Shown here in pieces: positions 10,047 to 63,645 of a stretch of DNA of 64,000 nucleotides. The notes beneath the pieces are model-generated. The model did not search any database. It was given only the letters and a program-made list of their open reading frames with translations, and was not told the DNA's origin. The stretch comes from Octopus sinensis (taxonomy: Eukaryota). Positions within the stretch are counted from its first letter, which is position 1. Every line of letters starts with the position of its first letter. The DNA is taken from NCBI RefSeq assembly GCF_006345805.1, contig NC_043015.1, positions 42,780,001-42,844,000 of the forward strand, read 5' to 3'. Made by a program: the position numbers and the translations under genes.

Positions 10047-10093
<47 letters not shown>

Positions 10094-10418
10094 TTTTTGG
10101 ATTTGGTTTGCAAGATTCTTTATATGAGTTCGTGTGTTGGAGCATATTCTGTTGTGTCTGGGGAGAGTCATTTTTTTTCTTTTTGTGCCTTATAATTTAA
10201 CACACTCACCTGTAAAATTTCCACTTAGTTTTGACTCTTGAGTCAAAACTATTGAAAAGGTTGCAAGACGCAACAAAAATTTTAGGAAAATAAAAATAAG
10301 AAATAAGTGGAAATTTTACCGGTGAGTGTGTTAAATCATAAGGCACAAAAAGAAAATGACTCTCCCCAGACACAACAGTATACACACACACACACACACA
10401 CACATAAGCGTGTGTGTG

Positions 10419-15403: not shown

Positions 15404-18400
15404 TATATATACATATGGGTGTGTGTATGTGTGTATAGATGTAGACATATACTACATATATATACATATATATACATGTGTGTGTGTGTGAGATTGTGTT
15501 TGTCTTCCACCACCACTAGACAACCTACGTTGGTGTGTTTGCATTCCAGTATAGTCATAACATAACAGCAGTGCACTTACTTCTACCTTATAATATGTAT
15601 GAGATCACAGTTATGACATCAGAACAGTTCACTCCTCTCTTATTTTATGTATGAGTCCACACTTATGACATCTCGAGAGTGGTTAACTCCTTTCCTATTA
15701 TTTGGATGTATTTACGATTATGACATCAGAGTTGTTCACTTCTATTTCTTCATTTGTACGTGTTCAAAATTATGACATCGGATTGTTAAGTCTTATCTTA
15801 TCATTTGTATATATTCACAATTGTGGCATCATAATAATGCTCTCCCACCTTATAATAAATATGTGTTCACAATTTCCATTCTCAGTAGCTGTCTTTGGAA
15901 TATGTTGGTCCTTTATTGGATCTTTTCTGTTTGAATGGCAGTTTTTTCTAGCGGTGTCATATGAAATTGTCACCCATAATTATGACCCTAGTATCAATCT
16001 ATTGCATTTCAATCTGTTTTAGGGTTAGGGTTAGTTAAGGTTAGGGTTAGGGTTAGGGGTGGGGGAAGGGTATCTTTTTTTCTTCATAAATGTAAATAAA
16101 CCCAATCTGTTTCTTAAACGAGGGACATATTCATGCGGCACAGAATGTTTTTCACCTCAATAGACAGTCATTGATTGGTTGAAATTGCAGAAATTGAAGA
16201 AAAAAACAACTAATATCTTACAAACTATAGAATTTTCTCAATAAAGCCAAGAGAAAAAGATGTTTTATAAACACATTCTACCAGTATACGAAGTTTAAAA
16301 GTGTTTAGTTACCTGGAAATTATTTTAAAAAACTGCCGTTCAAACCGAAAAGATCCCCTTTATTTTCTAAGATATTTTCCAGTGTATTTATGTCATGTGG
16401 CCAGTTTGCCATGTCTTCTGGAATGTTCTAGAGAGTTCTGTGAGTCATATTCGAACAAGGTGTAACTGATGATACTGTTTAACACATCATTGTACATTAA
16501 CGCAAGCAACGCTTTGTTTTGACGTTGCTTCGGTATACATTACTGACGTCAAAGAACGTGAGGCGAGGAGGAGGAGAGAAAAAGAGGGACAAGACAGACA
16601 GAGACAGAGACAGATAGAGAAACAGATAGAGGTTGAAAGCTAGAGAGAGAGAGGGGGAGAGAAAGAGATAGGCAGCGCGAAGCAGGGAGAAAGAGATAGA
16701 GACAGACAGAGGAAGTGATTGAAAGACAGTAAGATAGAGAGAGGTAGAAAGAGATAAGGAGAAAGAAATAGAAAAACAGGCAGAGAAGAGAAAGTGAAAG
16801 CGGCAAACAGACAGACAGAGCCAAGCAAGCAGAGACCAAGGCAATGTTCTCGAGCAGCAATAACCAGCGTCTGTTCTCAAGTGTCACATTAACACTGTTC
16901 TAGAGTATTCGAGCCGTCAGTAATGATAGAGTTATTGTTGAAAATGTTACCTGATGAAGGTTCATAAATTAGGTGATGAGGAAGTGAATAAAAATGCCAA
17001 AACAACAGGAAAATAAGAAAACAATGTTTATATCACTCCCAAAATACTATTCAGGTATGATTCATTGCAGACGTTCATGAAGAACTTGTGTAAACGTGAA
17101 GAGGCACTAACACACCTTGGCCTTCTGAATTTGCAATCTGAAATTTCAAAGTGTTCCTTATGCTAAGTTTAAGCCCAACCCAGATCAGGTCATTTCACAG
17201 CGTTGGCTAGAGATACTGCAGTAGACTGCAAGCTAAAATAGCATCGGATTTTCTTATGACTGTTGGTATGCCGGATGAATCATTTGAACTTGTGAACATT
17301 AAAACATTGACACAATCTCCGAATACAAAAAAATAAACTGAACAATTCCAGCAATAAGTGGAAACCTTGTTTGAAAATTTAGAGAGAAAGATTTTTATTG
17401 GTCTTTGTGGAAAAAAAAATCAAACCAAATCTAAAGTATTTTGTTTTGGGATTTGGTTTGCAAGATTCTTTATATGAGTTCGTATGTTGAAGCATATTCT
17501 GTTGTGTCTGGGGAGAGTCGTTTTCTTATTGTGCCTTATAATATAACACACTCACCGGTAAAATTTCCACTTTTTTTTCTTATTTTTATTTTCCTAAAAT
17601 TTTCGTTGCGTCTTACAACCTCACGCAACGAAAACTTTAGGAAAATAGAAATAAGAAAAAAATGTGGAAATTTTACCGGTGAGTGTGTTATATTATAAGG
17701 CACAAAAAGAAAATGACTCTCCCCAGACACAACAAATCTAAAGTGTCATTGTTGTATAGCATGGCAACAACTTACCTCAAAAGAAATGTTTGGGCAACGA
17801 TAAGGATAAATAAATCTTTTAAATATTGCGATGCACGGCAAATCTTCAAAATTTATGAATATTAAAACGTTACATTATTTACATTTGACGGATATTTGTT
17901 TTCATCTTGTTTGTTGTTAACACTATCTCTCATATGTATTGATGATGTTTGGAGTAAATACCATGTATCCAGTGAAATAATCTTCTGTTTATTGTTTTCT
18001 CTGAGAGGCCACGGACAGATTCTAATACCATTCTGTTATAATTTCCAAGAGCTTCAATTGTAATCAAGATTACCTGAGTTTTCGATGTCCGTATTCTTTT
18101 CGGACTTAAATAATTTTACAGTCTTCTTTCGTGCAATGGTTCCAGGTTCAGTCCTACTGTGTGGCACCTTGGGCAAGTGTCTTCTATTATATCCTCAGGC
18201 TGACTTAAGCCTTATGAGTGGATTTGGTAGGCAAAAACTAAAAGAAGCGGTAGGCAGAAACTAAAAGAAGAAACTAGAGCGGCAAGCTGGCTGAAACATT
18301 AGCATGCCGGGCGAAATTCTTAGCGGTATTTCGTCAGTCTTTACATTCTGAGTTCAAATTCCGCCAAGGTCGACTTTGCCTTTCATCATTTCGGGGTCAA

Positions 18401-21363: not shown

Positions 21364-24300
21364 TTGATAGGTAGTTAAAAAGAAATATATATTGCTTGCT
21401 TATTAGAGCAAATGCACTCAAACGCATATACTCGAGTTTGTATACGTGCGTGTGCGTACGTGTGTGTATGTATGTGCGTCTGCGCACAAAAGTGTCTATG
21501 AGCGTGCGTGTGTGTGATGTCATTTGCGTTAATAACCAATGAACAATGTTTGGTGCTGTTTCAAATTCCCCACACCTTATAGGAAACTCAAAACCAATGC
21601 TAAACACACACACACAGTAGACAAACTTACGCTGGTATTACACTCGAATATACTAAAATCTGAAACAGATACATAATATATATATATATATCTGATAAAA
21701 TGAATCATTATCGTTAATTAATCAGAGACGTAAAAACTGTTTAAGCGATGATTAAACGACGGCACATGAGATGTTTACTTTATTTACGCTGTTCTTTTGA
21801 ATTCTAGCGAGTTTAGCATAGCACGAGGTCAATTTCCTTTGAATATGTTCCAACAAGTTCAATGACGTCTTGTTTACCGTAATTAAAGAATTCGACTTAT
21901 AACTTTATCTCTGTCACCATCTTTCAAATATTCTGCTTGGTTGTTCTGCTTTTAAGTAAGTTAGATGTGCTTCGACCAAAGATTGGTCCAGGCCATGTCT
22001 AACTTAATGGCACCGCCTGATAGGATTTGCTAAATCCTTATTTAAGTCAAGTTTTGCGGTATCGTGGCCCATTCAAGTAGGGAGTTCTTGTTGAGTGAGT
22101 TGTATCCGGGTATTGGTGGCTTATCTGGTATCCCTTGAAGAAATTTGTCCAGATCTCGTTTACAGGTAATGGAATAGGGCAGGGCTTGTTGAAGGAAGGA
22201 AACTCTTTTGCTGTGTATTTATGTGTTGTGATCCAGAATTGAGCAAGACTTCCGCCCGTCCCCGCAAATGACCACCCTTAAAAAAAATTTTTTTTTTCGA
22301 CACAACCCCCTCTTTTCCGCTACGGGGAATACGAATCTGCAAAAAAATTGGCAAAAATCGACATTTCTAAATTACCCCCCACCCCCACCCCCATTTCCTT
22401 CATTTTCAACTTTTTTTCAGAATTTTTTTTTTCAAAATATGCGAAAAATATGGAGATTATGATTCTGAAAAAAATTTCCAAAAATGTTTGTAAATTATTT
22501 TTTAAGAATTAGTTTTTTCTAAATATGTGGAAAAATACGGACATCATGATTCGGACAAAAATTTCAAAACATTTCAAAACGGTTAGGGTTTTAGGGTTAG
22601 GGTTAGGATTTTAGGATTGGTTGAAGAAGTTTGGGGGGAAAGGGGGGGGATTTTCACAATGCCGATTTTTGGTAATTTTCCAGAACCTCCGTGTCCGAAA
22701 ACAGGGACTTTTGGCAAAAAAAAATTTTTTTTGATAAACAAATTTGGGAGAAAATGGGTAGGGGGACAGGCGGAAGTCTTTCCCTGAATTGTGTAGGGGA
22801 CGTGGTCCTAATCCTGGTTGGTTAACATGCAGTTTGTCGCCGTAAAATAAAGTGAAAAGAAATTGTCTTAAAGAAATTGAAGTAAATTGTGATAAAAACC
22901 GAAGTTATCAATTATTCGCTTAGGTTTCTTGGTTCAAACGATGACAGCATTCATACATAGGTTATAAGGAAAGCAATAGAAGTTTGCCAAGAACAAACTT
23001 AGGCGACAATATGGGACAAGTAACGCTTTATTTACAACATCCAGGCCCGTTGCCAGACTTCGGTGTCAGGAGGTGCTCTGAAGCATGGAACAAACTACCT
23101 GCATCAGTTGTCAGTTGCTGAGACATTGCTTCCTTAGATGTTATAGGTCGTTGTTGCATCTAATGTGACTTCGTTCAGAAGACTGTTATGTTGTGGCGGT
23201 AGTAAACCCGGATGAAGAATGTATAAAACACTAGATGGTAACTTTGACACGTTTTGTTGTGGTCACACACCACACATATAGACAAGCTGCATGGAAGGTT
23301 GATATACATTTATATATATAGGCGCAGGAGTGGCTATGTGGTAAGTAGCTTGCTAACCAACCACATGGTTCCGGGTTCAGTCCCACTGCGTGGCACCTTG
23401 GGCAAGTGTCTTCTACTATAGCCCCGGGCTGACCAAAGCCTTGTGCGTGGATTTGGTTGACGGAAACTGAAAGAAGCCCGTCGGATATATGTATATATAT
23501 ATATGTATATATATGCGTGTGTGTGTTTGTGTGTCTGTGTTTGTCACCCTAGCATTGCTTGACAACCGATGCTGGTGTGTTTACGTCCCCGTAACTTAGC
23601 GGTTCGGCAAAAGAGACCGATAGAATAAGTACTGGGCTTACAAAAGAATAAGTCCCAGGGTCGAGTTGCTCGATTAAAGGGTGTGCTCCAGCATGGTCGC
23701 AGTCAAATGACTGAAACAAGTAAAAAAGAGTAAAGAGTATCTACAGGCATCTGTGTAGGTTGTATGTAAGATGTTAACCCAGGTGAGAAGCTCAAGAATA
23801 GCGATATAGAAACCGATACAGTGTGTTGGTGCTGTGTAGATGTTGACGACATTGGTGAGAGACATTAGTGGTGGCGACGAAGATGGTTGTCGCTGCAATG
23901 GTGGTCAGTGGTTAGACCTTAGAAAGTCTAGGACCAAGTGACGTCGAGCCTAGGAAGAGGTGAGCTTTTATAGCTGACGGTTAGGCTCAAATGCTTGTTT
24001 GGAACAGACTGTCTCACATGACTTATTTGCAGGTTGTGATTGGTTGGGTTGCACATTGCATGTGACAGAGCCTCAGATTGAGATTGAGGGTACAACTCTG
24101 AACAACGTGAAGAGTTTTACATACCTGGGAAGCTGCCTGTCCTCAAACAGCAGCATGGACAAAGATGTCTCCATGAGGCTTTCAAAAGCAGTAGCTTCGT
24201 TTAGCAAACTTTGGAAGTGTGTGTGGGCCGAACGAGGCATCCGACTTTCCACCAAGCTGGCAGTCTATAGGGCAGTCGTCATCACCTCTCTGCTCTACGG

Positions 24301-27300
24301 CTGTGGGATGCGGACACTGTATAGGAGGCAAATGCGAGTACTTGACCAGTTCCACCTCCGCTGCTTGCGACGAATCATGGGAATTTCCTGAGAGGACAGA
24401 GTCTCCAACAGTGAGGTGCCTCGCAGGGCCAAAATACCCGGGATCGAAGCCCTCATCATGAAGGCCCAGCCCAGGAAGGCCACTGAGGCGATACAAGGGC
24501 AGCCTGAAGACTTCCCTTGAGGCCTGCGGCATTTCAGCTCATGGCTGGGAATCGCTTGCCTCTGACCGCGGTGCCTGGCGTCCAGCTGTCCAAAAGAGTG
24601 TTAGGCTGTTCAAGGAAAAGAGCCTGGACCAGAAGCGACAAGCCTGAAAAGAGAGGATCCCTAACCCTACTTCTGCTGTTACGTGCCCAACACGTAGCCG
24701 CGTCTGCCTTTGGGTTACGCTCGCACCTCCGGCATCACTGATATCATTGTTGAACCCCGACAGACTTCCATTATTATTATGTGATAGAATATAAGACAAA
24801 TTGCGCCAATATCAACCAATTGGAGTGGTAGACACAGCAGGGTCCAAAACAAAGGCTAGCTGTTACCTGCTACGTTCGTATGTACTTAATATAAGAGAGG
24901 AAGCTCACTAGGGTTCGGTACTCATCCATTAAAACTTCCATGCTTCCTGAAATTTGCCAACACTATACCTGATATCACAAAGCACCGTACAAGCACGCAC
25001 GCACACACACACACGCGCATAAGGCGGGCTTCTACGCATTTTATTACCAAATTCACTCACAAGGCATTGGTCTACCACATTTTTACGCATATTTAGAAAA
25101 AAAAAAAATTTTTGGAAATTTTTTCAGAATCATAATCTCCATGTTTTTCCGCATATTTTGAAAAGAAAAAAATTGTGAAAAAAGTTTTAAATAAAGAAAT
25201 GGGGGTGGGGGTGGTAGAAATGTCGATTTTTGTCAATTATTTTTGCAGATTCGTATTCCCCGTAGCCGAAAAGGGTAGTTTGTGTCGAAAAAAAAATTTT
25301 TATAATGGTGTTTTTTTTTTGGTGGAGGAGAAGTCTTGCCAAAAAAAAAATCGATTTAAATTTTTACCTCACCCCCATCCCTAAATCCTTACGGATGCTC
25401 AATTAGACTTAACTCATATTGATCACACAGTTATGGAAGGGTTTGAGGTCGTGCTAGAAACAACAGTTAAATCTCACTTTATTCACACATTTTTTCGTCT
25501 GAAAATTAATTAGAAATTATTTGAAAGAAACGGTTGCAGATTCGGACTGTCCGTGAACAGGAATAAAAAAATTCGAAAAAAAAAAAACAGAGAAAATTTT
25601 AGGATTTATGGGGGGTGAGGGGAATGAAGAATTTGAAAGAAAAAAATTGTTTTGCATAACTGTATGAATTCCAGTGTGTAGGACATAAATTCGTAAAAAA
25701 TTTGATAAAATTCCCCAAAATATAAAAGCTATGGGGGTTTATATGATTGTGCTTGGATCAGAATTCCACCGGTGTTGTAATATACGCAATACAGATTAAA
25801 CGACCGTAAAATTGTACAATAAAATAGAATTCTATGTAATTCTATACCTATTTATAACGACTGCTCTCAGATCGCACATCACTTAGCTGAAGAAGAAAAA
25901 TAACACAGGTGTAATTCTACACCTGATTCTATAAGTCTTCTCTGATAGTAAGAACCCGGCTATCGCTTTGTGAAAGTAGCAAAATTATGGGCTACATCGA
26001 AAACACTGAACGAAAACATGAAAATGAAACGAAACGAATCAGTCCACTTTCGTCTTGCGTGTAATATACTGAATATAAATGTATTTATTAATGATGGTGG
26101 TGGTACTGTCGAGGAATATGTAAGCCGATAGACATCGTCTTATTTGGGTAGAAGAAGCATCCCGACTGACTGAATACCTCCCTGTTGTTAAGTGCATACC
26201 ATTACGAAGAATTGGGGTATGTTGACGGTGGCGAAGAAAAAATGGGTTTTAGGGTTTCCTATTCTATCCTGCTGCTTGCTGATTAATTTAGATACTCGGG
26301 TTACAATACAACACAGAGGGGGAAGCGAATAGAAAAGGCATCTTCACCGTGCTAAATAATATTTAAATAGAGCTTAATTAATATCCACCACAGGGCATTG
26401 TAAATTGACGTAATTATTTACTAATCACTGAGTGGGGCAAAATGAGTAATTTATGACTTCTTATTGTTTTCGTTCTATTTTTTATTTTTTATTATTATAT
26501 TGCTGTACTGCATCGTTATTTTGTGCTGTAGTATCGTCTTTAGAGTATAATTTGGCCAGCATAGTTGTTATTGTTGTTGAGAGAGAGTTTGGAACATAAT
26601 CAGGTGACAGGTATCGTTTTTTTTTTTTCAAGAAAATTTTCGTCAACTTTGACCCGGTTATAAATAAGGTTACTAATAAAATATCTGGATAATTTTTTGA
26701 AGTTTAACAATCAATATTCTTTTCTCTGCTGGATTCAAAGTCAATTCCCCCCCACACACACACACACTAATGTCTAATTTGATAATTTTCAATTTTCAAA
26801 AAAAAAAAACGGTGTTTAAACTGAGGCAAAATAAGTCGTAACTAACTTCAATAATTTCCTCTCTTTTAAAATATATCGGAAAGAGATATATTTCTTCTCT
26901 GTGTAAATATATCGGGAAGAGAACCACTCCAACGGATCGCGAAGAAGCTACAGAGAATATTTTGTGTTTTTTTCTTTCTTTTTTATTTAGTCAGAGTTTA
27001 ATAACTTTCATATCATGTGCCATTTTTCCGGGATCCTCTTTCATTTGACCAACATCTTTTAAATTTTTGTTGCATTTCTGATATCTAAGGATGGATATTG
27101 ATATATACGTATATGATTCTCTTTTCAAATGTAAATCTGGGGAACTGAAGAGGCAAATTTGGGATCTTTGCCCTTTGAACGGTAGATCGAGAAATTAATT
27201 TTTTGTAACAAAACACTTTCAAACTTCGAACACTGGTAGAATGTGTCATATAAAACATCTTTTACTCTTAGCATTTTTGAGAAAGGTTTATATTTACGAA

Positions 27301-28870: not shown

Positions 28871-31800
28871 TGTGTGTGTGTGTGTGTGTATGTTTGTGTG
28901 TATGTGTTTGTCCCCCTAGCATTGCTTGACAACCGATGCTGGTGTGTTTACGTCCCCGTAATGTAGTGGTTCGGCAAAAGAAACCGATAGAATAAGTACT
29001 GGGCTTACAAAGAATAAGTCCCGGGGTCGATTTGCTCGACTAAAGGCGCTGCTCCAGCATTGCCGCAGTCAAATGACTGAAACGAGTAAAAGAGTATCGA
29101 TTCCGAAAAGGAAAATCGATGTATCTGTACTAGTCGTGTACTGACGTCGTTGGTATCGTCTAAGCCCCATCTCCTCAAAATTACTGGCATTGTCGCCTAA
29201 ATTAGTCATCGTTATATTAATAGGTATATAACATTTTTTTTTTAAATTGGGAAGAACATAATATACCAAAGTAAACAGATAAAAAGGATTAACTTAGGAT
29301 ATGAAGCTGGAAGAAATATCGCTAAGTATTTTGTCTTCATGGTTAAAGATTAGAAAGGAAGACAAACCAGAAACAAATCCTCTTTTACTCTTTTTCTTGT
29401 TTCAGTCATTTGACTGCGGCCATGCTGGAGCACCGCCTTTAGTCGAGCAAATCGATCCCCAGGACTTATTCTTTTGTAAGCCCAGTACTTATTCTATCGG
29501 TCTCTTTTGCCGAACAGCTAAGTGACGGGAACGTAAACACACCAGCATCGGTTGTCAAGCAATGCTAGGGGGACAAACACACACACAAACAAACACACAC
29601 ACACATATATATATACATATATACGACAGGCTTCTTTCAGTTTCCGTCTACCGAATCCATTCACAAGGCTTTGGTCGGCCCGGGGCCATAGCAGAAGACA
29701 CTTGCCCAAGATGCCACGCAGTGGGACTGAACCCGGAACCATGTGGTTGGTTAGCAAGCCACTTAGCACACAGCCACTCCTGCGCCTATTCATTCCGTGA
29801 ATGAATAATTAAATACACTCCTTCAATTATACCCCACACCAGGGGGAAACTGATATTCCCTCTCAAAATTGTTGGAGACACCCCAAAACACTCCTGGCAT
29901 TACTTGAAGGTGAGCCAGGCACCCTGCCAAGTATCATCTTGATATGTCAGGTGGGACGTTAAAGTAGTCGAAAACGTCCTTGTCAGCGCTCCAACAACCC
30001 AGCAAATTCTCCAAACACTCAGACAGAGCAAAGAGGAATATGATTTACTGACAGATTACAGTATTTTCAGTGCCTTATTCTGTTCAGATAGGAATGTAGT
30101 AACCCCATATCGCTGCTGTAGCGTTACCTATTTACCTGTCCTATGAATCACCTTTGATAAACAGGACATATTTTCCTGGCGTCTATGCATCGTATACGAT
30201 ACACTTTGCCACATTTTTTGTGTTTTTTCGACCACCGAAATAACATGTCCTATCTACATACTTATACCTAACAGCGGCTTCAAAGACTGTTCTGACGAAG
30301 TAGAAATAGTAGATTTTACAGCTGAATAAAATGCCTTTCGGGTTGATAAAACTGTGAAAATATTGGACCTGGCAGTATTTATGCCAGCTCTTTGCATTTC
30401 GAGTTCAAGTCTTGCCATAGACTGCTTGGTAGGTAACTTTAAACCATTGCTGTTTAACACCATTACCTGGTTCCTTGTGTGCCTTTAGCGGAGTCCATTT
30501 TGTTGCCAGCATTTAGACCAATCTTCTGGTTTGAAAATACTCTCCTTTGTAGGATGGAGCCTACAAAGATTCGGTGTCCCTGTATAGAGTTTGGGCACTA
30601 CTTTCTTCCTTGATTGAATAAGAAAAAAACGAAAAAATTCAAGACGTTTTGGGTATGAAATGAGGGATATTTTGTTGCTATTTCTAGTGTGTGATGCAGC
30701 CATGTAGAGGTTTCCTCAATGGCTTGAAATTGTTAAATGTCTTAAGCACTAGTGTAGCTTAAGTGTGTGCCGCCTGGGGCGGATCTTCCGTTTTCCATCC
30801 CCGTACCTCACAAAAAGCACATACTGCTTACAACAGACCCCAAAGTGGCACCTCTTTAAAAGTGCTACGCTAGTGATTCTAAGTGTTTAAAAAAATCAAT
30901 TACCGTGTTTGATGACTTACAAGATGCACTCACCTCACTCCAAGAAAAAAGTCCCCAAAAATACCCCCCAAAAAAAATCGTACTGGGTTCCATATGCAAT
31001 GTTGGGTCCGCATTACATGTTTTAATACATTAAAAACCTTTATTCCTGAGTAAGTACAGCTGAAATCAGGGTACGTCTAATATACCCGCGCGTCTTTACG
31101 CCGTCAACTACGCCATACAATATATTAGTTTCAGTTTTTTGGGCGCTAGGCCAGCAAGTTCGGGAGACGGGTTAAATTGATTATACTAACCCCCAGTACT
31201 CAAATGGTACTCACTTTATCGAGCTCGAGAGGATGAAAGGCAACATCAACCTCGACGGAATTTGACTTTAGAACATAAAGACGGATAAGATGCTGGTAAG
31301 CATTTCGTCCGACGTCCGAACAATTCTGTCAGCTTTCGAATTCTGCCAAGGTAATTTTTGCTTTCCTCCTGTCTGGGGGTTCGCTAAAGTTCAAATCAAT
31401 CGGGAACGTCAACGTGCTAAATAATATTTAAATAAAGCTTAAATAATATCCACCGCAGGGGCATTGTAAATTGACGTAATTATTTACTTATCACTGGGTG
31501 GGGCAAAATGAGTAATTTCTGATTTGTTGTTATTTTTGTTGTATTTTGAATAGAATTCTTTCGAATTCTGCCAAGGTAAATTTTGCTTTCCTCCTGTCTG
31601 GGGTTCGCTAAAGTTCAAATCAATCAGGAACTTGTTGGATAGGGTATCAAAATGATCTTTAAAAACAAGAGGGTTTTAACGTTTTAATTTAAAATTTCGG
31701 GCTTGTTTTCCCTCTTTGAGATAAACAGAATTAAACCGTGCAGCTAATTGTTCTTTCACCTCGACACAGATATCTATGTAAATGTTTTGTCTCATTACAT

Positions 31801-34618: not shown

Positions 34619-36463
34619 CTCTTTTACTTATTTCAGTCATTTGACTGTGGCCACGCTGGAGCCTTTTAGTCGAGCAAATCGACCCCAGGACTTATTCTTT
34701 GTAAGCCTAGTACTTATTCTATCGGTCTCTTTTGCCGAACCACTACATTATGGGGACGTAAACACACCACCATCGGTTGTCAAGCGATGTTGGGGGTACA
34801 AACACATACACACACATTCATATATTATATATATATGACGGGCTTCTTTCAGTTTCGCTCTACCAAAACCCCTCACAAGGCTTTGGTTGGCCTGAAGTTA
34901 TAGTAGAAGACACTTGCCCAAGGTGCTATACAGTGGGACTAAACCCGGAACCATGTAGTTCGTAAGCAAGCTACTTACCACACAGCCACTCGGCCTGTCA
35001 ACCTGTGCCTGACAGCCACGATTGTGGCCTGTTGTGCTTTATATGTTAAAAAAAATCAAATAATTTAAATTAAAAATTTTTTTTATGACGCAAGTAAATT
35101 TTTTCTTTCTTTCATTTTCCAGTATTTATACCAAAAATGCAAACGGAACGAAAACGGTGTCATTACCTGGAAGGAATTCATAACCAGAGTACGGAAAGTA
35201 CTTCGGCAACGACATTACGGGTAAAACAATTTCATTTTCTACATGTTTTAAAATTCACCATCACTTAGCATCCGTTTTCCATGCTGGCATGGGTTGTTAG
35301 ACAGTTTGACTGGAATTGGTAAAGTGGAGAGCTGCACCAGTCCCCAGTCTGATTTGGTTTGGTTTCTACAGATGGGGGGGCCCTTCCTAATGCCAACCAC
35401 TCCACAGAGTGTACTGGGTGCCTTCTACGTTTCACCGACACTGGTCATGACTACAATTTCTCTTGGCTTGTTGTGTATCCTTTGTCATTATGATAATAAT
35501 AATTGCTTCGAATTTTTGGTACAAGGCCAGCAATTTCATCAGAAGGGGTTTAGTCAAATTACATCGATCCCCAGTATTTAACTGGTACTTATTTTATAAA
35601 CCCCAAAAAAGATGAAAGGCAAAACTGACCTCAACAGAATGTTTTTTTTTGTTGTTGTTTCTCTTAGTTTCTAAATGTTTTTAATGTTCAGGCCATGGTT
35701 AAGAAGCTCACATTGGAACCCTGTAATTTCAGGTTCAGTCCCACAGCATGGCACTATGGACAATATCTCGGCGGGCAAGGCAGACCGTCACCACACCAAC
35801 TTCTGTTTTTTTTTTTTTTTTCTGCAGAAACCCATGTTTTGGCTACGGAGATTTCTGAATCTGAAATTTCAAAATGCCAATATTTTTTACAGATTCAGAA
35901 TTTCCATAGCCAGAAACATGGGTTTCTGCAGGAAAAAAAGAAAAAGAAAAAAAAAAACCCAGAAGTGGGTGTGGTGACGGTCAGTCAATATTTCTTCCAC
36001 TATAGCCCTGAACCAACCAATGCCATATGAGTGCATTTGGCAGATGGAAACTGTGAGGAAGCCCATCATACATATATTTGTGTGTGTGTGTGTCCACTAT
36101 CCCCGGGGAATCAGTATTAGTTTGTTTACATCCTTGTAACTTAGCAGTTGCAAAAGAAACTGATAAAGTCCCAGACTTAAAAAAATAATAAGCACTGTGG
36201 TCAGTTTGTTTGACTAAAACCTTCAGACCATTGCTCCAGCATGGGAACAGTCCATTGATTGACACAAGTAAAAGATACATGTATGTGTCTGTTCTGATTT
36301 TGGTTTTCACATTCCATATAAATTATGAAGTGGTTGGCATTAGGAAAGACGTCCATTTGTAGAAATCATACCAAAATGGACACTAGAGCAGGATGCAGTC
36401 CTTGGACACATCAGATCCTGTCAAATTGTCCGATCCATGCCAGCATGGAACATGGACATTAAA

Positions 36464-36495
<32 letters not shown>

Positions 36496-36748
36496 TTGTT
36501 GTTGTTTTTATATTTAAACGTTTTTTTTTTTTTGAAATTCCAGCATTGAGGATGTAAGGAACTCGTTCCAGAAGTGTGATAAAGACGGAGACGGATACAT
36601 AACTATCGATGACCTTCTCAAAGCTACCAAAGAAATCGAGCGGCAGTCTTTGGCAGAGGATCAACTGCAGGCCTGGGTGGACTTTATCGACAAAAACAAA
36701 GATGGTAAAGTCGACTACTCAGAATTCATGGTCAACTTTGGTTTCTAA
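8892..36748 (+). CDS. Calmodulin-like four-EF-hand calcium-binding protein, ~165 aa; join(8892..9086,35123..35220,36544..36748)
   Basis: Spliced translation: MTENEVIEERVLNLEPVAKTELLPEREIKFYVAFTEAADPKLGGIHKEEFMDVAKQIGFSKITIE|YLYQKCKRNENGVITWKEFITRVRKVLRQRHYG|IEDVRNSFQKCDKDGDGYITIDDLLKATKEIERQSLAEDQLQAWVDFIDKNKDGKVDYSEFMVNFGF*. Phases 0 and 2 match across GT-AG introns, and inter-loop spacing is calmodulin-like. The exact subfamily is not recognised. Confidence 0.88.
9481..10070. repeat. Tandem duplication of a 296-nt hairpin-containing unit bounded by (TA)n
   Basis: Landmarks at 9624 and 9920; each unit carries a perfect 34-bp inverted repeat. Confidence 0.9.
10090..10378. mobile_element. Fold-back repeat (family E), copy 1
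   Basis: ~75-nt inverted arms ctgttgtgtctggggagagtc...ccactt, plus a 5' segment shared with copy 2. Confidence 0.75.
11230..12830. repeat. AT-rich minisatellite with higher-order structure (~20 nt, 61 nt, 122 nt)
   Basis: Landmark tttgtgtccacc recurs at 11751, 11873, 12055, 12182, 12304 and 12426; the flanks are degenerate. Confidence 0.92.
13850..14061. repeat. AT-rich fold-back with nested arms
   Basis: Outer arms tgaaaatataaatattat...aaaaatagagcaccat and inner arms ataaagcagtggta / taccactgctttat. Confidence 0.8.
14080..14515 (+). mobile_element. tRNA/CORE-like SINE family A, near full length
   Basis: Head ggctgtgtggtaag...ggttcagtccc, ccttgggcaagtgtc-type core, internal microsatellite, tail ccagcatggccgcagtcaaatgact. 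Confidence 0.85.
15233..15268 (+). ncRNA. Hammerhead-like motif of a second repeat family (A6-to-U core variant)
   Basis: cttt-CTGTGGA-a-gagc(gtag)gctc-GAAAC-GTA-aaag: stems I and II pair and the cleavage triplet is GUA, but the core reads CUGU instead of CUGA. Confidence 0.45.
15918..16356. mobile_element. Non-autonomous TIR DNA transposon (GGATC termini, 8-bp TSD, internal TTAGGG tract), Merlin-like
   Basis: ~29-bp TIR ggatcttttc[t/g]gtttgaa[t/c]ggcagttttt; perfect TSD cctttatt (15910-15917, 16357-16364). Confidence 0.85.
17438..17732. mobile_element. Fold-back repeat (family E), copy 2
   Basis: Near-continuous hairpin ~17500-17732; 12-bp direct repeat caaatctaaagt at 17426-17437 and 17733-17744. 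Confidence 0.75.
19725..20209 (+). mobile_element. tRNA-headed SINE-like element with hammerhead tail (family D) and inverted partial tail at its 5' end
   Basis: Inverted tail 19725-19813; tRNA-like head 19821-19890 with A/B boxes; (AAT)n/(GAT)n spacer; tail 20040-20209; flanked by 12-bp direct repeat taaacaccagtg (19713-19724, 20210-20221). Confidence 0.8.
20084..20129 (+). ncRNA. Minimal type I hammerhead ribozyme motif (Penelope-like, palindromic stem III)
   Basis: gacac-CTGATGA-a-ggctg(gagggtatat)cagcc-GAAAC-GTT-gtgtt: stem I 5 bp, intact core, stem II 5 bp, loopless AACGTT stem III, GUU cleavage triplet. Activity not shown. Confidence 0.7.
21265..21365. repeat. (AGAT)n(AGAC)n microsatellite
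   Basis: Direct inspection. Confidence 0.95.
22242..22783. mobile_element. Non-autonomous TIR element (GGCAAGACTTCC-type termini, 8-bp TSD, internal TTAGGG-like tract)
   Basis: TIR aagacttccgcc[c/t]gtccc; TSD cagaattg/ctgaattg; a partial opposite-orientation copy lies at ~25085-25340. Confidence 0.7.
23323..23735 (+). mobile_element. SINE family A, full length
   Basis: Same head, core and tail as the other family A copies. Confidence 0.88.
23985..24741 (+). mobile_element. Decayed RTE/BovB-clade LINE fragment (RT thumb to C-terminus)
   Basis: Translates FTYLGSCLSSNSSMDKDVSMRLSKAVASF...KLAVYRAVVITSLLYGC...FHLRCLRRIMGIS*, and later ...GLRSHLRHH*; has an in-frame stop and frameshifts. Confidence 0.88.
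27162..27462. mobile_element. Related GGATC-ended MITE
   Basis: TIR ggatctttgccctttgaacggtaga / tctgccggtcaaaaggtaaagatcc; perfect 8-bp TSD caaatttg. Confidence 0.7.
27603..28027. mobile_element. Second copy of the GGATC-TIR element
   Basis: Collinear with 15918-16356; TSD aggacatt/aggtcatt. Confidence 0.85.
28240..28655 (+). mobile_element. 5'-truncated CR1-group LINE 3' end
   Basis: Translates NTRGHVYKVRKQHSSHDFRKHSFTSRVAEAWNKLPASVV...FK (RGH...WNxLP motif), followed by a 3' UTR and an (ATT)n tail. Confidence 0.8.
28660..29095 (+). mobile_element. SINE family A
   Basis: Same consensus, with a small internal deletion. Confidence 0.88.
29380..29790 (-). mobile_element. SINE family A
   Basis: Reverse-complement full-length copy. 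Confidence 0.88.
32288..32584 (+). mobile_element. Non-autonomous Helitron
   Basis: 5' TC(TTTATATATAAAAG), subterminal GC hairpin cccg-agcaacgc-cggg, 3' CTAG; inserted between A and T with no TSD. Confidence 0.85.
32735..32955. mobile_element. Fold-back MITE with GGTAC termini and 8-bp TSD (Merlin-like)
   Basis: 35-bp perfect outer IR (32735-32769 / 32921-32955), inner IR 32784-32808 / 32890-32914, TSD aaaagtgc/aaaagcgc. Confidence 0.8.
33885..34113 (-). mobile_element. SINE family B
   Basis: Full reverse-complement copy. Others at ~13255-13800 (three fragments, -), 18280-18505 (+), 18828-18970 (+), 31165-31335 (-), 43065-43255 (-), 44065-44280 (-), 52405-52560 (-), 52626-52857 (+) and 55690-55900 (+). 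Confidence 0.88.
34620..34990 (-). mobile_element. SINE family A
   Basis: Reverse-complement copy ending ~130 nt upstream of EF-hand exon 2. Confidence 0.85.
35123..35220 (+). CDS. EF-hand gene coding exon 2 (EF2 loop KRNENGVITWKE)
   Basis: Polypyrimidine tract ttttctttctttcattttccag, phase-0 entry, donor GG|GTAAAA, phase-2 exit. Confidence 0.88.
35783..35982. repeat. Fold-back element in EF-hand intron 2
   Basis: Arms gaccgtcaccacaccaacttctg...(T)n...ctgcagaaacccatg...gaatctg pair with the reverse complement ending at 35982. Confidence 0.75.
36544..36748 (+). CDS. EF-hand gene coding exon 3 (EF3 DKDGDGYITIDD, EF4 DKNKDGKVDYSE, stop)
   Basis: Acceptor ttccag; phase-2 entry completes GGC; two canonical EF loops; TAA at 36746-36748. 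Confidence 0.93.
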
Positions 36749-36888
36749 ACCATTCCAATTGGCGCATAACCATAAACTAAATCCATATCATCTTACTATA
36801 CATATATACATACATACAGACACACACATAGCATACTCTTCTGTGATGATAAATCAACAAAAAACGTACACCGTCTGGGGAGAGATAA

Positions 36889-37128
36889 ATATTATTTAAT
36901 AAGCACAATATATGTATTGATGTGCTACTATTAGTTTCCTGTTCTGAGAGCATGCCAAACAGTGTTTTATAATGTGCCTGGTGCTCTAGCACAATCATCA
37001 GACACTGTAAGCAGTGTCTGATGATTGTGCTAAGATACCAGATGTATTAAAAGACGCTGTTTGGCCTGCTCTCAGCACAGGAAAATAATAGTAGCACATA
37101 AATACATATAGTGTTTATTAAATAATAT
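36889..37128 (+). repeat. 240-nt imperfect hairpin in the presumed 3' UTR of the EF-hand gene
   Basis: Arms 36889-37007 and 37012-37128, 4-nt loop TAAG, perfect 21-bp apical stem. Confidence 0.92.
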
Positions 37129-37417: not shown

Positions 37418-39383
37418 AGTAAATAAATATTTCTGAAATTTTACTCTTTGCTCATTTTCTATGCCATATCTTTTTTTTTTTTTGTTCCAATATTTTCGGT
37501 ATTAAAAATTTTGGAAAATTAACCTAACACTACCAGTGGCACTCAACCATGGTTCATATGATCTCTGGGGAACGAGTAGTCCATGTAAGATTTTTGGGGG
37601 GTCCACACAAGGAAAATAGTAAATTGGAGACCCACAGTAATATTTTAAGGGTCCATAAAAAGGAAATTTTGCAAAGAAATAGCTAGGATTCATTTTGTAA
37701 TGTTTTTACATACTTCAACATGTCTCCAGCCACTGGAAAAAAAAAGAGAATGTTCTTTCAGTGAGTGCAAATGCAAACCTATATAAATGAAAGACAAAAA
37801 TGGGAATTTTGAAAGAAGTAGCGATAGAACTAGTTTTTAAACATGGAATGGATATGTGGGTCCATCAAAATAAAATAGTCATCAATGGAGCCCATAAATA
37901 AAAAAAAAAAACATAGTTCAGTACCAGTGGTCTAAAGAGAGGTACACTTTAGCTATGAGTGTAAAACAGCAGAACAGGATGGAATGAAGCTTTGTATAAA
38001 ATTTTGAAGGCAGCAGAATATAAGCGCAGGCATAGCTGTAAAGTTAAGAAGCAAGCTTTACAACCTCTACATATCACCTTAGGCAGAGTCATCTCCCTTA
38101 GATCATTTTCAGTTAGGTCTATGTCGCTGTTGAAAACATCAGAAGGTGGTAGCATTCCTTGAGTTGGAAAATTTGGTATTCCATGTTTCTAACAGAAATT
38201 TCCTCTGATGAGGGCACTGAATAAACATCTCTTTTTTGGAGTTTAAAAAGGGTCTACATCAGACGAAATTCCTTTTAGAAATATGGAATTTCCCATTTGC
38301 TGACTAAAGAAATGCTACCACCTTCAGATGTCTTTGGCAGGTGTATGGACATAACTGGAACTAATCTAAGGGAGATAACTCCACCTCACTCAAAGGTTTT
38401 ACCAGTAAAGTTTCATTCCAGAATTTTTGTTTACAAACTGACCATAACGTTTCTCTCCCTCTAGTTGTAGAAAAGTTGTCTCTGGCCATTTGAGTCTGAT
38501 TAGTTGCCTGTATGGCTAAGCACTTTATAGGTGTGAAACCAATGGTCACTTTCTGGCTGGCCATAACAAATAACCTCATATATATATGTAAATATATATA
38601 GACGCACATAAATATATGTGGGTATGTTGATGGACCAGCGTCCCGTCCAGGTGGGGAACCTATACGCCAAGGAAACCGGGAAACCGGCCCTATGAGCCAG
38701 GTGTGGCTCGAGAAGGAATAACAACAACATCATAAAATATTTCCTTGGGTATAATTAAGTTTTTTGCCTTTTTGCATTCAGAAATATCCATTAAGTAATT
38801 AGCTTAGTTTTTTTTGTTTTTTTTTATGACAAAATATTTACATATGAAACTGATTAACCCTTTAGTGTTTAGTTCTGCCAAAATTAATCCTTTTTTTATC
38901 CACATTGTTTTGAACTAATCATTCATTAATCTTGTAGCTTTGAGATTTTGATGAGGTAGCTGTTAATTTTTAAAACGATAAATAGAATTGTTTCCGCTGC
39001 CACTGTCCTGTTACTGCAGGTGAGAAAACTCCTATGCTGACATGATGCACCTACCGTGTTTTAAAGGTTAATTAGAGCAGAGTGCGTGCTAAAGGTTTAG
39101 CTTAACTCCATACCAAGAGTTTGGCAGAGTAACCTTTTAGCATTCAAATTACTCTGCCAAATCTAATGCTTATTTATTCAAACTATTTTGAAAAATTAAA
39201 AATTATCCATTATCTCTTGACAGTTCAATGATGTGATTTTCAATTAATTTTTAAACTAACGAAGAATTCAGTAAAATAATTGCTGCTATTAAGTTGTTAT
39301 TTGGAATATAAATCAAATTAAAATTTTGAAGGAAGCTTTTCATTGAAATCACTTCAAAATAAAAAAAATTGTGTCAAAAAAAA

Positions 39384-43480: not shown

Positions 43481-62994
<19,514 letters not shown>

Positions 62995-63095
62995 CTGGAA
63001 TAACGGAAGAGAACAACAGATCAACGGAATTGGAACGGTATCGGCGAAATTACTATGAAGGCAATTTGTCATGTTTAAAGTGCAGGCTAAGTAGT

Positions 63096-63145
<50 letters not shown>

Positions 63146-63335
63146 AAAAGAGATGTACTATCTAGTTTCAGCTCACGAGCTGTGGCCATGCTGGGGCACC
63201 ACCATTCAGTGTTGCTACATGATTTTACTTCACGAATGCTTTTTAGCAACTGCCATTTGGTGCGTGAGAGAGTTCGATGCAGCTGCCCTCATCTGCACCT
63301 CCTGCCGTGAAGTTGGTTCATCTGGGACACCTGAC

Positions 63336-63645
63336 AAGGACAAGATACTGTGATAGCCTGGGCTTCAGAGGTCCACAGCTCTTCAATATCCTCCCGAAGG
63401 ACCTGAGAGACCTGCATGGGGTGGATGCAGATGTCTTTAAAATAAAACTGGACCTCTTCCTGTCAGGTGTCCCAGATGAACCAACTTCACGGCAGGAGGT
63501 GCACATGAGGGCAGCTGCATCGAACTCTCTCATGCACCAAATAGCAATTGCTAAAATTCATTCGTGAAGTAAAATCATGTAGCAACACTGAATGGCGGGG
63601 CCCCAGCATGGCCACAGCTCGTGAGCTGAAACTAGATAAAATATA
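63336..63645 (+). mobile_element. Non-LTR retrotransposon 3' end (CR1/L2/Jockey supergroup), preceded by an inverted copy of its own 3' end at 63158-63335
   Basis: Translates GPQLFNILPKDLRDL...FKIKLDLFLSGVPDEP...RAAASNSLMHQ, typical of an ORF2 C-terminus; A-rich tail. Confidence 0.75.

What the first reader, a model, noticed from the sequence alone, without database searches (positions are those of the whole stretch)
36889..37128. 240-nt G:U-rich hairpin 140 nt downstream of the EF-hand stop codon
Seen: arms 36889-37007 and 37012-37128 close a 4-nt loop with a perfect 21-bp apical stem. Manual alignment of the arms gave about 16 substitutions and one 2-nt bulge. Of the 11 transition differences, 8 form G:U wobbles on the + strand and 3 form A-C mismatches, which hints that pairing is maintained in the sense mRNA. 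It matches no other repeat in the window and I saw no TSD. Established: long 3' UTR dsRNA with A-C mismatches is a preferred ADAR substrate, coleoids edit heavily, and such hairpins can also yield miRNAs or hairpin endo-siRNAs. ATTAAA variants in the right arm (~37045, ~37117) could allow alternative polyadenylation to remove the stem.
Basis: partly seen in the sequence, partly recalled or inferred. Interest (0 to 1): 0.7.

Follow-up and report, generated by a model that had tools for sequence, protein, structure and literature searches.

The report
Decaying foldback repeat after octopus gene
The 240-base inverted repeat just after a calmodulin-like gene in this octopus genome is real, but a second octopus species shows it drifting apart at the same rate as neighbouring non-coding DNA, so it is not being kept as a working RNA hairpin.

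Summary
The arms are 36889-37007 and 37012-37128, with a 4-nt loop and a perfect 21-bp apical stem. There are 16 substitutions and one 2-nt bulge, and 8 G:U against 3 A-C. The hairpin starts 140 nt after the stop codon.

The interpretation that pairing is maintained in the sense mRNA does not hold. I recovered the orthologous locus from Octopus bimaculoides, and the hairpin is present there.
- Its between-species divergence is 6.8%. The intron shows 6.7% and the flanks 6.2-6.8%. The coding exon shows 2.9%, all synonymous.
- Of 15-16 lineage-specific arm substitutions, none is compensated.
- The inferred ancestor folded at about -183 kcal/mol on both strands. The descendants fold at -150 and -141.
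- In O. bimaculoides the minus strand folds slightly better. The 8:3 G:U bias is not significant (p = 0.11) and is not replicated (5:4).

The window holds other foldbacks of similar size, one of them a two-copy repeat.

Most likely this is a neutrally decaying palindromic insertion (MITE-like) or inverted duplication, older than the split of the two species. If transcribed, it would be a passive ADAR substrate, like many octopus UTR hairpins. Transcript ends, editing, small RNAs and genome-wide copy number could not be tested.

The parts
36889..37007 (+). Left arm of the foldback (119 nt)
   Evidence: Orthologous arm in O. bimaculoides differs at 7 substitutions (6.1%) plus two 2-nt indels.
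37008..37011 (+). 4-nt loop TAAG (TGAG in O. bimaculoides)
37012..37128 (+). Right arm of the foldback (117 nt)
   Evidence: 8 substitutions (6.8%) against O. bimaculoides.
36987..37032 (+). Apical perfect 21-bp stem plus loop. The 21 stem columns are invariant in all four arms of the two species.
   Evidence: An invariant run of this length anywhere in the arm has p = 0.07-0.23.
36545..36748 (+). Last coding exon of a calmodulin-like EF-hand gene (two EF-hand loops; stop codon 36746-36748). Context for the hairpin.
   Evidence: The protein is identical in O. bimaculoides and all 6 nucleotide differences are synonymous.
35123..35220 (+). Penultimate coding exon of the same gene (EF-hand 2). 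Context.
   Evidence: All 7 differences to O. bimaculoides are synonymous.
36749..36804 (+). Block directly after the stop codon, 100% identical between the two Octopus species. It holds the weak poly(A)-signal variants CATAAA and ACTAAA (36771, 36776), so a proximal transcript end is possible.
37422..37427 (+). Only canonical AATAAA within about 700 nt of the stop codon, conserved in O. bimaculoides. Candidate distal poly(A) signal that would place the hairpin inside the 3'UTR.
37046..37051 (+). ATTAAA in the right arm, conserved in O. bimaculoides
37117..37122 (+). ATTAAA in the right arm, lost in O. bimaculoides (ATCAAA)

Best explanation
The feature is a neutrally decaying 240-bp DNA palindrome (foldback). 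It lies in the short intergenic or 3'UTR stretch between two convergent genes: a calmodulin-like EF-hand gene on the + strand and LRRC40 on the - strand.

Shown: it arose before the window's Octopus species and O. bimaculoides diverged. At that divergence the arms differed at only 7 of about 117 positions. Since then each arm in each lineage has accumulated uncompensated point changes at the background non-coding rate.

Inferred: its origin is most likely the insertion of a small non-autonomous, whole-length-palindromic DNA transposon (MITE-like, possibly with a TA target duplication hidden in the palindrome). A one-off local inverted duplication is the alternative origin.

Inferred: it has no selected RNA function. 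If the gene's mRNA runs on to the conserved AATAAA at 37422, the hairpin is transcribed. It then folds into roughly 110 bp of imperfect dsRNA and is promiscuously edited by ADAR as a by-product, like the many other hairpins in octopus 3'UTRs and introns.
For: 1. The orthologous copy is present in O. bimaculoides at L003 33029-33264, in the same position relative to the stop codon.

2. Divergence between the species is 6.8% in the hairpin. It is 6.7% in the adjacent intron, 6.2% and 6.8% in the 3' flanks, 6.5% in a second nearby foldback and 2.9% in the coding exon.

3. The four-arm alignment has 92 invariant columns, 7 arm differences shared by both species, 15 single-arm lineage-specific substitutions plus 1 complex site, and 0 sites where both arms changed together. 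The count of structure pairs finds 0 pairs changed on both sides, 7 pairs broken in O. bimaculoides and 3 kept through a one-sided change.

4. Only 5 of 17 new changes keep a wobble pair. That is about what random transitions give.

5. The parsimony ancestor folds at -183.3 (+ strand) and -183.2 (- strand) kcal/mol. The present sequences fold at -150.3 / -137.7 (window) and -141.5 / -144.4 (O. bimaculoides). This is decay in both lineages, with no conserved strand preference.

6. G:U against A-C is 8:3 in the window (p = 0.11), 5:4 in O. bimaculoides and 9:5 for independent events (p = 0.21). A-to-G and T-to-C changes on the + strand are 3 and 3.

7. Foldbacks are common in this window:
- a two-copy repeat carrying a 235-nt foldback at 17437-17734 and 10087-10377;
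- a 306-nt single-copy foldback at 38081-38386 that is also orthologous;
- an inverted SINE pair at 52450-52790 with the same 12.6 kcal/mol strand asymmetry, favouring the strand antisense to its host gene.

8. No Rfam family reaches threshold.

9. A distant cephalopod homologue of the exon (78% amino-acid identity) has no inverted repeat in the 464 nt after its stop codon.

10. Literature: octopus A-to-I editing is concentrated in intron and 3'UTR hairpins (PMC9699675). Across metazoans it targets dsRNA from young repeats (PMC9989829).
Against: - Only one orthologue could be obtained, so the power to see covariation is low. About 0.15 compensatory pairs would be expected even under neutrality.
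- No second copy of the sequence was found in about 100 kb of Octopus DNA, so the transposon origin is inferred, not shown.
- A TSD cannot be distinguished from the palindrome.
- The apical 21 bp are invariant in all four arms. If the apical position had been specified in advance, p would be 0.002-0.011. A small conserved sub-element is therefore not excluded.
- Neutral evolution of most of the stem does not exclude a function that needs only 'some long dsRNA'.
- No transcript, editing or small-RNA data could be consulted.
Confidence: 0.72

Rival explanations
1. One-off local inverted duplication. A fold-back or template-switch event during replication or repair copied about 118 nt in inverted orientation with a 4-nt spacer. 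This made a unique palindrome that has decayed neutrally since. The fate and lack of function are the same as in the best explanation. Only the origin differs.
For: Single copy in the window and in the O. bimaculoides locus. The very short 4-nt spacer is typical of snap-back products. The neighbouring foldback at 38081-38386 is also single copy in the DNA available. A 4-5-nt cluster of old arm differences (columns 85-88) looks like a small template-switch patch.
Against: About 100 kb is far too little DNA to exclude a family of up to tens of thousands of copies. The AT-rich ends with mirror-image TA fit a transposon insertion equally well. A repeat of the same architecture and size is demonstrably multi-copy in this window.
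Confidence: 0.3
2. Selected cis-regulatory dsRNA in the sense 3'UTR. Under this reading the stem is kept paired in the mRNA, tolerating G:U. It would recruit ADAR or other dsRNA-binding proteins and control stability, localisation or translation of the calmodulin-like mRNA. Alternative polyadenylation inside the right arm would act as a switch.
For: The + strand folds 12.6 kcal/mol better than the - strand in the window, with 8 G:U against 3 A-C. The hairpin has persisted since before the species split. No canonical poly(A) signal precedes it, and a conserved AATAAA follows it. The apical 21 bp are invariant.
Against: The substitution rate is neutral. There is no compensatory change, and 12 of 17 new changes destroy pairs. 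Both lineages lost 33-42 kcal/mol. The asymmetry is reversed in O. bimaculoides and absent in the inferred ancestor. The bias is not significant. An equal asymmetry is seen in an intronic repeat pair on the antisense strand of its host gene. ATTAAA at 37117 is not conserved.
Confidence: 0.06
3. Small-RNA precursor. The hairpin, or its conserved apical 21-bp duplex, would be processed into a miRNA-like RNA or into hairpin-derived endo-siRNAs.
For: Long, nearly perfect hairpin. The apical stem is invariant in both species and both arms. Palindromic MITEs have given rise to miRNA genes elsewhere, for example MADE1 to hsa-mir-548 (PMC1784062, listed).
Against: No Rfam miRNA family reaches even a third of its gathering score. 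The 4-nt loop on a perfect 21-bp stem is unlike canonical Drosha/Dicer substrates (established knowledge, not tested). A mollusc survey including O. bimaculoides small-RNA data found no dedicated endo-siRNA pathway (PMC12479628). The invariance of the apical run is not significant without a prior. The loop itself differs between the species.
Confidence: 0.04

Closest known systems
Whole-length palindromic MITEs of the Tc1/mariner (Stowaway/MADE1) type, e.g. human MADE1, the source of hsa-mir-548 (PMC1784062)
   Same: Small and non-coding. Almost the entire element is one inverted repeat closing a tiny loop. The ends are AT-rich and compatible with a TA target duplication. It often lands in UTRs, where it forms RNA hairpins.
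   Different: MADE1 is 80 bp and demonstrably multi-copy, with defined TIRs and TA TSDs. Here the element is 240 bp, no second copy has been seen, the TSD is indistinguishable from the palindrome, and no small RNA is known.
The foldback-bearing repeat in this same window (17437-17734 and 10087-10377)
   Same: The foldback is almost the same length (235 nt) with a short loop (11 nt), in the same genome. It shows that such palindromes are generated and dispersed here.
   Different: No sequence similarity to the studied hairpin, except a 12-mer (GTCTGGGGAGAG) that lies just outside the hairpin. That repeat has a 63-nt non-palindromic extension on one side. It is also younger, with arms 96% complementary.
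Inverted-repeat SINE/Alu pairs in introns and 3'UTRs as promiscuous ADAR substrates (PMC9989829, PMC5625713)
   Same: Long imperfect intramolecular dsRNA made from repeat-like DNA in non-coding parts of transcripts. They evolve neutrally and editing is a by-product. Octopus editing is concentrated in such hairpins (PMC9699675).
   Different: Those duplexes come from two separate copies of a dispersed repeat, with spacers of hundreds of nt. This one is a single contiguous palindrome with a 4-nt loop.
Drosophila hpRNA loci (hairpin endo-siRNA genes)
   Same: Long hairpin transcripts with near-perfect stems.
   Different: hpRNAs depend on a dedicated Dicer-2/AGO2 siRNA pathway and co-evolve with target genes. 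No such pathway was detected in molluscs (PMC12479628), and no target-like sequence or selection is seen here.

Membership tests
MITE (miniature inverted-repeat transposable element) | Terminal inverted repeats | tested here: met
   The outer 14 nt pair perfectly and the whole element is an inverted repeat.
MITE (miniature inverted-repeat transposable element) | Small size (less than about 800 bp) and no coding capacity | tested here: met
   240 bp. Only chance ORFs of 73 aa or less cross it, and these have no protein homologues.
MITE (miniature inverted-repeat transposable element) | Multiple dispersed copies in the genome | tested here: inconclusive
   No other copy in the 64-kb window or the 36.7-kb O. 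bimaculoides locus. No relevant hits in viral, prokaryote-genome or metagenome collections. No whole Octopus genome or repeat library could be searched. About 100 kb excludes only very high copy numbers.
MITE (miniature inverted-repeat transposable element) | Target-site duplication flanking the TIRs | tested here: inconclusive
   Mirror-image TA at 36890-91 and 37126-27, and complementarity ends 1 nt beyond. A TA or ATAT duplication is self-complementary, so it cannot be told apart from the palindrome. No empty site was available.
Structured RNA element under selection | Compensatory (both-sides) changes that keep pairs | tested here: not met
   0 of 108 pairs changed on both sides, and 7 pairs are broken in the orthologue. 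There are 0 ABAB columns in the four-arm alignment. Only two species were available, so power is low.
Structured RNA element under selection | Substitution rate below that of flanking non-coding DNA | tested here: not met
   Hairpin 6.8%, intron 6.7%, flanks 6.2% and 6.8%.
Structured RNA element under selection | Consistent strand preference of the fold across species | tested here: not met
   Window + / - strands fold at -150.3 / -137.7. O. bimaculoides folds at -141.5 / -144.4. The inferred ancestor folds at -183.3 / -183.2.
miRNA gene | Match to a curated miRNA family | tested here: not met
   The best Rfam hits on the apex score 27.6 bits against gathering scores of 90 or more. Nothing reaches gathering score in the whole window.
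miRNA gene | Precursor geometry: imperfect stem of about 33-35 bp with a terminal loop of roughly 8 nt or more (criteria recalled from MirGeneDB/Drosha literature) | tested here: not met
   4-nt loop on a perfect 21-bp stem that continues into a stem of about 110 bp. The criterion itself is from memory.
miRNA gene | Reads from both arms with 2-nt offsets and homogeneous 5' ends | not testable with these tools
   No small-RNA data are accessible. The held supplement of PMC9699675 is a k-mer table, not miRNA sequences, so one search is not a test.
ADAR substrate (promiscuously edited dsRNA) | Long, mostly paired intramolecular duplex | tested here: met
   108 predicted pairs at -150.3 kcal/mol, including a perfect 21-bp run and three A-C mismatches.
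ADAR substrate (promiscuously edited dsRNA) | Both arms lie within one transcript | not testable with these tools
   Only indirect evidence. There is no canonical signal before the hairpin, and a conserved AATAAA lies at 37422. However, conserved weak variants sit at 36771/36776 in a 100% conserved block. The O. bimaculoides gene table gives CDS ranges only.
ADAR substrate (promiscuously edited dsRNA) | Clusters of A-to-G RNA-DNA differences | not testable with these tools
   No RNA reads are accessible.
hpRNA / endo-siRNA locus | A dedicated endo-siRNA pathway in the taxon and phased 21-nt reads from the hairpin | not testable with these tools
   From the literature only: no evidence of a dedicated endo-siRNA pathway in molluscs, including O. 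bimaculoides (PMC12479628).

The most novel reading that the evidence does not exclude
The apex of the decaying foldback has been exapted. This is the 21-bp duplex at 36987-37032, which is identical in all four arms of two Octopus species while the stem just below it is the most mismatch-dense part. It could act as a short conserved hairpin: a non-canonical small-RNA precursor, or a binding site for a dsRNA-binding protein in the 3'UTR of a calmodulin-like gene. The rest of the palindrome would drift.
Probability: 0.05. Interest if true: 0.45.

Novelty: new member of a known kind. Interest (0 to 1): 0.13.

Why it matters
It matters little in itself. Long foldback hairpins in octopus non-coding transcript regions are already known as the main, largely non-adaptive, targets of A-to-I editing. 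This one behaves like neutral DNA.

Its use is methodological. An apparent excess of G:U over A-C in a single sequence is not evidence for sense-strand selection. Here one orthologue was enough to show that the bias is chance, and that the ancestor had no strand preference.

The locus could serve as a dated, single-copy test substrate for studying how ADAR editing declines as a hairpin decays. The arms differed at 7 positions at the species split, and at about 16 plus indels now in the window species.

Tried and rejected
1. Other copies.
- blastn of the whole hairpin and of the non-AT-rich core against the window and the O. bimaculoides locus found only self and orthologue hits. The remaining hits were TA microsatellites.
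- The 19-mer of the apical stem in JGI metagenome contigs gave one non-palindromic chance hit, L002.
- Viral contigs and prokaryote genomes gave nothing.

2. Finding copies or transcripts through ORF translations. The 73-aa ORF across the left arm has no homologue. Exact look-ups of two window ORFs found nothing.

3. The EF-hand exon as a protein query found only one distant Logan contig. The orthologous locus was reached instead through the convergent LRRC40 gene.

4. Rfam gave only sub-threshold generic miRNA-hairpin hits.

5. Searching the supplements of the octopus miRNA paper for the stem sequence returned nothing. The held files are k-mer tables, so this is not a test.

6. I tried to rebuild the full calmodulin-like protein to look up transcripts. 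The upstream exons encoding EF-hand 1 were not found by motif scan or tblastn, so I abandoned this.

7. I considered a link to the two-copy foldback repeat through the shared 12-mer GTCTGGGGAGAG, 4 nt upstream of the hairpin. I rejected it as probably coincidental. There is no further similarity, and O. bimaculoides has ATCTGGAGAGAG at that place.

8. One search was a malformed call with no result.

Full report
**Observation.** The sequence at 36889-37128 is a 240-nt inverted repeat, exactly as described. The repeat finder reports arms 36905-37007 / 37012-37114 (84% complementary, 4 nt apart) and the outer 23-nt arms 36889-36911 / 37106-37128. As RNA, the + strand folds into one continuous hairpin of 108 pairs at -150.3 kcal/mol (z = -22.7 against dinucleotide shuffles). 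The - strand folds at -137.7 (z = -21.6).

- a perfect 21-bp apical stem closing the loop TAAG;
- 16 substitutions and one 2-nt bulge;
- 11 transitions, of which 8 give G:U and 3 give A-C on the + strand.

The exon ending at 36748 encodes two EF-hand loops. With the penultimate exon (35123-35220) it aligns to residues 60-143 of calmodulin. The hairpin starts 140 nt after the stop codon. ATTAAA occurs at 37046 and 37117. No other copy is in the window.

**Surroundings and organism.** The window carries an LRRC40 gene on the minus strand, convergent with the EF-hand gene. Its last coding exon lies at about 43490-43573. Using its exons as a protein query, I obtained the O. bimaculoides LRRC40 protein (P0002). 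From it I obtained the chromosome segment CM046619.1:8417139-8453861 (L003). That segment also carries the convergent 165-aa EF-hand gene.

The window aligns to this locus along its length at roughly 85-92% identity. It therefore comes from a different but closely related Octopus species. The last two coding exons differ at 13 positions, all synonymous.

**The orthologue test.** The hairpin is present at the same place in O. bimaculoides (L003 33029-33264, 236 nt). It therefore predates the species split. Four results bear on whether the RNA pairing is maintained.

1. *Rate.* Substitution divergence is 6.8% in the hairpin. It is 6.7% in the upstream intron, 6.2% between the stop codon and the hairpin, 6.8% just downstream, 6.5% in a second foldback 1 kb away, and 2.9% in the coding exon. 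The hairpin evolves at the local neutral rate.

2. *Pattern.* I aligned the four arms (left and reverse-complemented right arm of each species). This gives 92 invariant columns, 7 arm differences shared by both species and therefore older than the split, 15 changes confined to one arm of one species, one complex site, and no column where both arms of a species changed together. The count of structure pairs on the two-species alignment gives 0 pairs changed on both sides, 3 kept through a one-sided change and 7 broken in O. bimaculoides. Only 5 of the 17 new changes preserve a wobble pair, close to the quarter expected from random substitutions.

3. *Stability.* The parsimony ancestor at the split had 7 mismatches and folds at -183.3 (+) and -183.2 (-) kcal/mol. 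The descendants fold at -150.3 / -137.7 (window) and -141.5 / -144.4 (O. bimaculoides). Both lineages have lost 33-42 kcal/mol on the + strand. The ancestor had no strand preference, and in O. bimaculoides the minus strand is slightly favoured.

4. *The G:U bias.* 8:3 has a one-sided p of 0.11. O. bimaculoides shows 5:4, and counting independent events gives 9:5 (p = 0.21). A-to-G and T-to-C changes on the + strand are equal, 3 and 3. An intronic inverted repeat at 52450-52790 shows the same 12.6 kcal/mol asymmetry in favour of the strand antisense to its host gene. Asymmetry of this size therefore arises without sense-strand selection.

**How unusual is it here?** It is not unusual. The window contains:
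- a foldback of 235 nt (17500-17734; arms 96% complementary, 11-nt loop). It belongs to a roughly 300-bp repeat with a second copy at 10087-10377;
- a 306-nt foldback at 38081-38386 (arms 75% complementary, 14-nt loop). It is single copy and also present at the orthologous site in O. bimaculoides;
- several inverted pairs of SINE-like repeats.

This genome therefore makes and disperses palindromes of this size, and they are seen at different stages of decay.

**What it is.** The best reading is a neutrally decaying DNA palindrome that arose before the species split. On a simple clock, that was roughly as long before the split as the time elapsed since. This assumes the arms began identical: 6% old arm difference against about 3.5% per branch since.

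I favour origin as a small palindromic non-autonomous DNA transposon for three reasons:
- the size and the whole-length inverted repeat;
- the AT-rich ends with mirror-image TA, where complementarity stops one base further out;
- the demonstrably repeated foldback of the same size in the window.

This origin is inferred. No second copy was found in about 100 kb, which excludes only very high copy numbers. A one-off inverted duplication remains a serious alternative.

**Is it in the mRNA?** This is undetermined.
- No AATAAA or ATTAAA lies between the stop codon and the hairpin. The first canonical AATAAA (37422) sits in a well-conserved block. This favours a 3'UTR that includes the hairpin.
- On the other hand, the 56 nt after the stop codon are 100% identical between the species and contain CATAAA and ACTAAA. 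A distant cephalopod homologue has ATTAAA at the matching place. A short proximal 3'UTR ending before the hairpin is therefore possible.
- Of the two ATTAAA sites in the right arm, 37046 is conserved and 37117 is not.

**Function.** If transcribed, the stem is a textbook promiscuous ADAR substrate. In O. vulgaris most A-to-I editing lies in introns and 3'UTRs, consistent with hairpin structures there (PMC9699675). Across metazoans, including O. bimaculoides, editing mainly targets dsRNA from young repeats (PMC9989829). That would be a passive consequence, not a selected role.

The endo-siRNA reading is weakened by a survey that found no dedicated endo-siRNA pathway in molluscs (PMC12479628). 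The miRNA reading has no support from Rfam or from hairpin geometry, but it could not be tested against small-RNA data. The supplement I searched turned out to be a k-mer table.

**Residual oddity.** The apical 21 bp are invariant in all four arms. An invariant run that long somewhere in the arm has p = 0.07-0.23. The value falls to 0.002-0.011 only if the apex is specified in advance. I treat exaptation of the apex as the most novel reading not excluded, at about 5%.

**Verdict.** This is an ordinary member of a known class, scored low.

Noticed in passing
window 17437-17734 and 10087-10377: A roughly 300-bp repeat present twice. It consists of a 63-nt non-palindromic left part and a 235-nt foldback. 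In the 17.5-kb copy the arms are 96% complementary with an 11-nt loop. In the 10.2-kb copy the centre is rearranged. Homology ends exactly after ...CCCCAGACACAACA on the right. It is probably a mobile element with a terminal foldback.
   Followed up: partly
window 38081-38386 (L003 31756-32049): A second, older foldback about 1 kb downstream of the studied one. It has 146-nt arms only 75% complementary and a 14-nt loop. It is single copy in the available DNA and present at the orthologous site in O. bimaculoides (93% identity, 6.5% substitutions).
   Followed up: partly
window 36873-36884: The 12-mer GTCTGGGGAGAG is the terminal core of the two-copy foldback repeat. It also occurs 4 nt upstream of the studied hairpin: 5 hits in the window against 0.14 expected. 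There is no further similarity, and O. bimaculoides has ATCTGGAGAGAG here, so this is probably coincidence.
   Followed up: partly
window 36749-36804: The 56 nt directly after the stop codon are 100% identical between the two Octopus species, where about 6-7% divergence is expected. They contain CATAAA and ACTAAA. A distant cephalopod contig (L001, run ERR3431203) has ATTAAA followed by ...ATATCA at the matching position. This is a possible proximal polyadenylation or regulatory element.
   Followed up: partly
window 35123-35220 and 36545-36748: The last two coding exons of a calmodulin-like gene (165 aa in the O. bimaculoides annotation). All 13 nucleotide differences between the species are synonymous. 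The upstream exons encoding EF-hand 1 were not located in the window.
   Followed up: partly
window about 43490-63040, minus strand: An LRRC40 orthologue, convergent with the calmodulin-like gene. The two stop codons are about 6.7 kb apart. In O. bimaculoides an MT-A70 domain gene lies upstream of LRRC40 (L003 2726-4384).
   Followed up: partly
window 63159-63638, 53581-54027, 45339-46051, 52463-52774, 28879-29605: Inverted pairs of high-copy SINE-like repeats, with arms of 99-178 nt (85-96% complementary) and spacers of 114-461 nt. Several lie in LRRC40 introns. These are further potential dsRNA-forming structures.
   Followed up: no
window 36461-36510: A compound microsatellite (GAT)n(GGT)n(GTT)n in the intron just upstream of the last exon. 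It is about 24 nt shorter in O. bimaculoides.
   Followed up: no
window 23999-24391: A 130-aa ORF resembling the C-terminal part of a LINE-type reverse transcriptase (degraded retroelement fragment).
   Followed up: no
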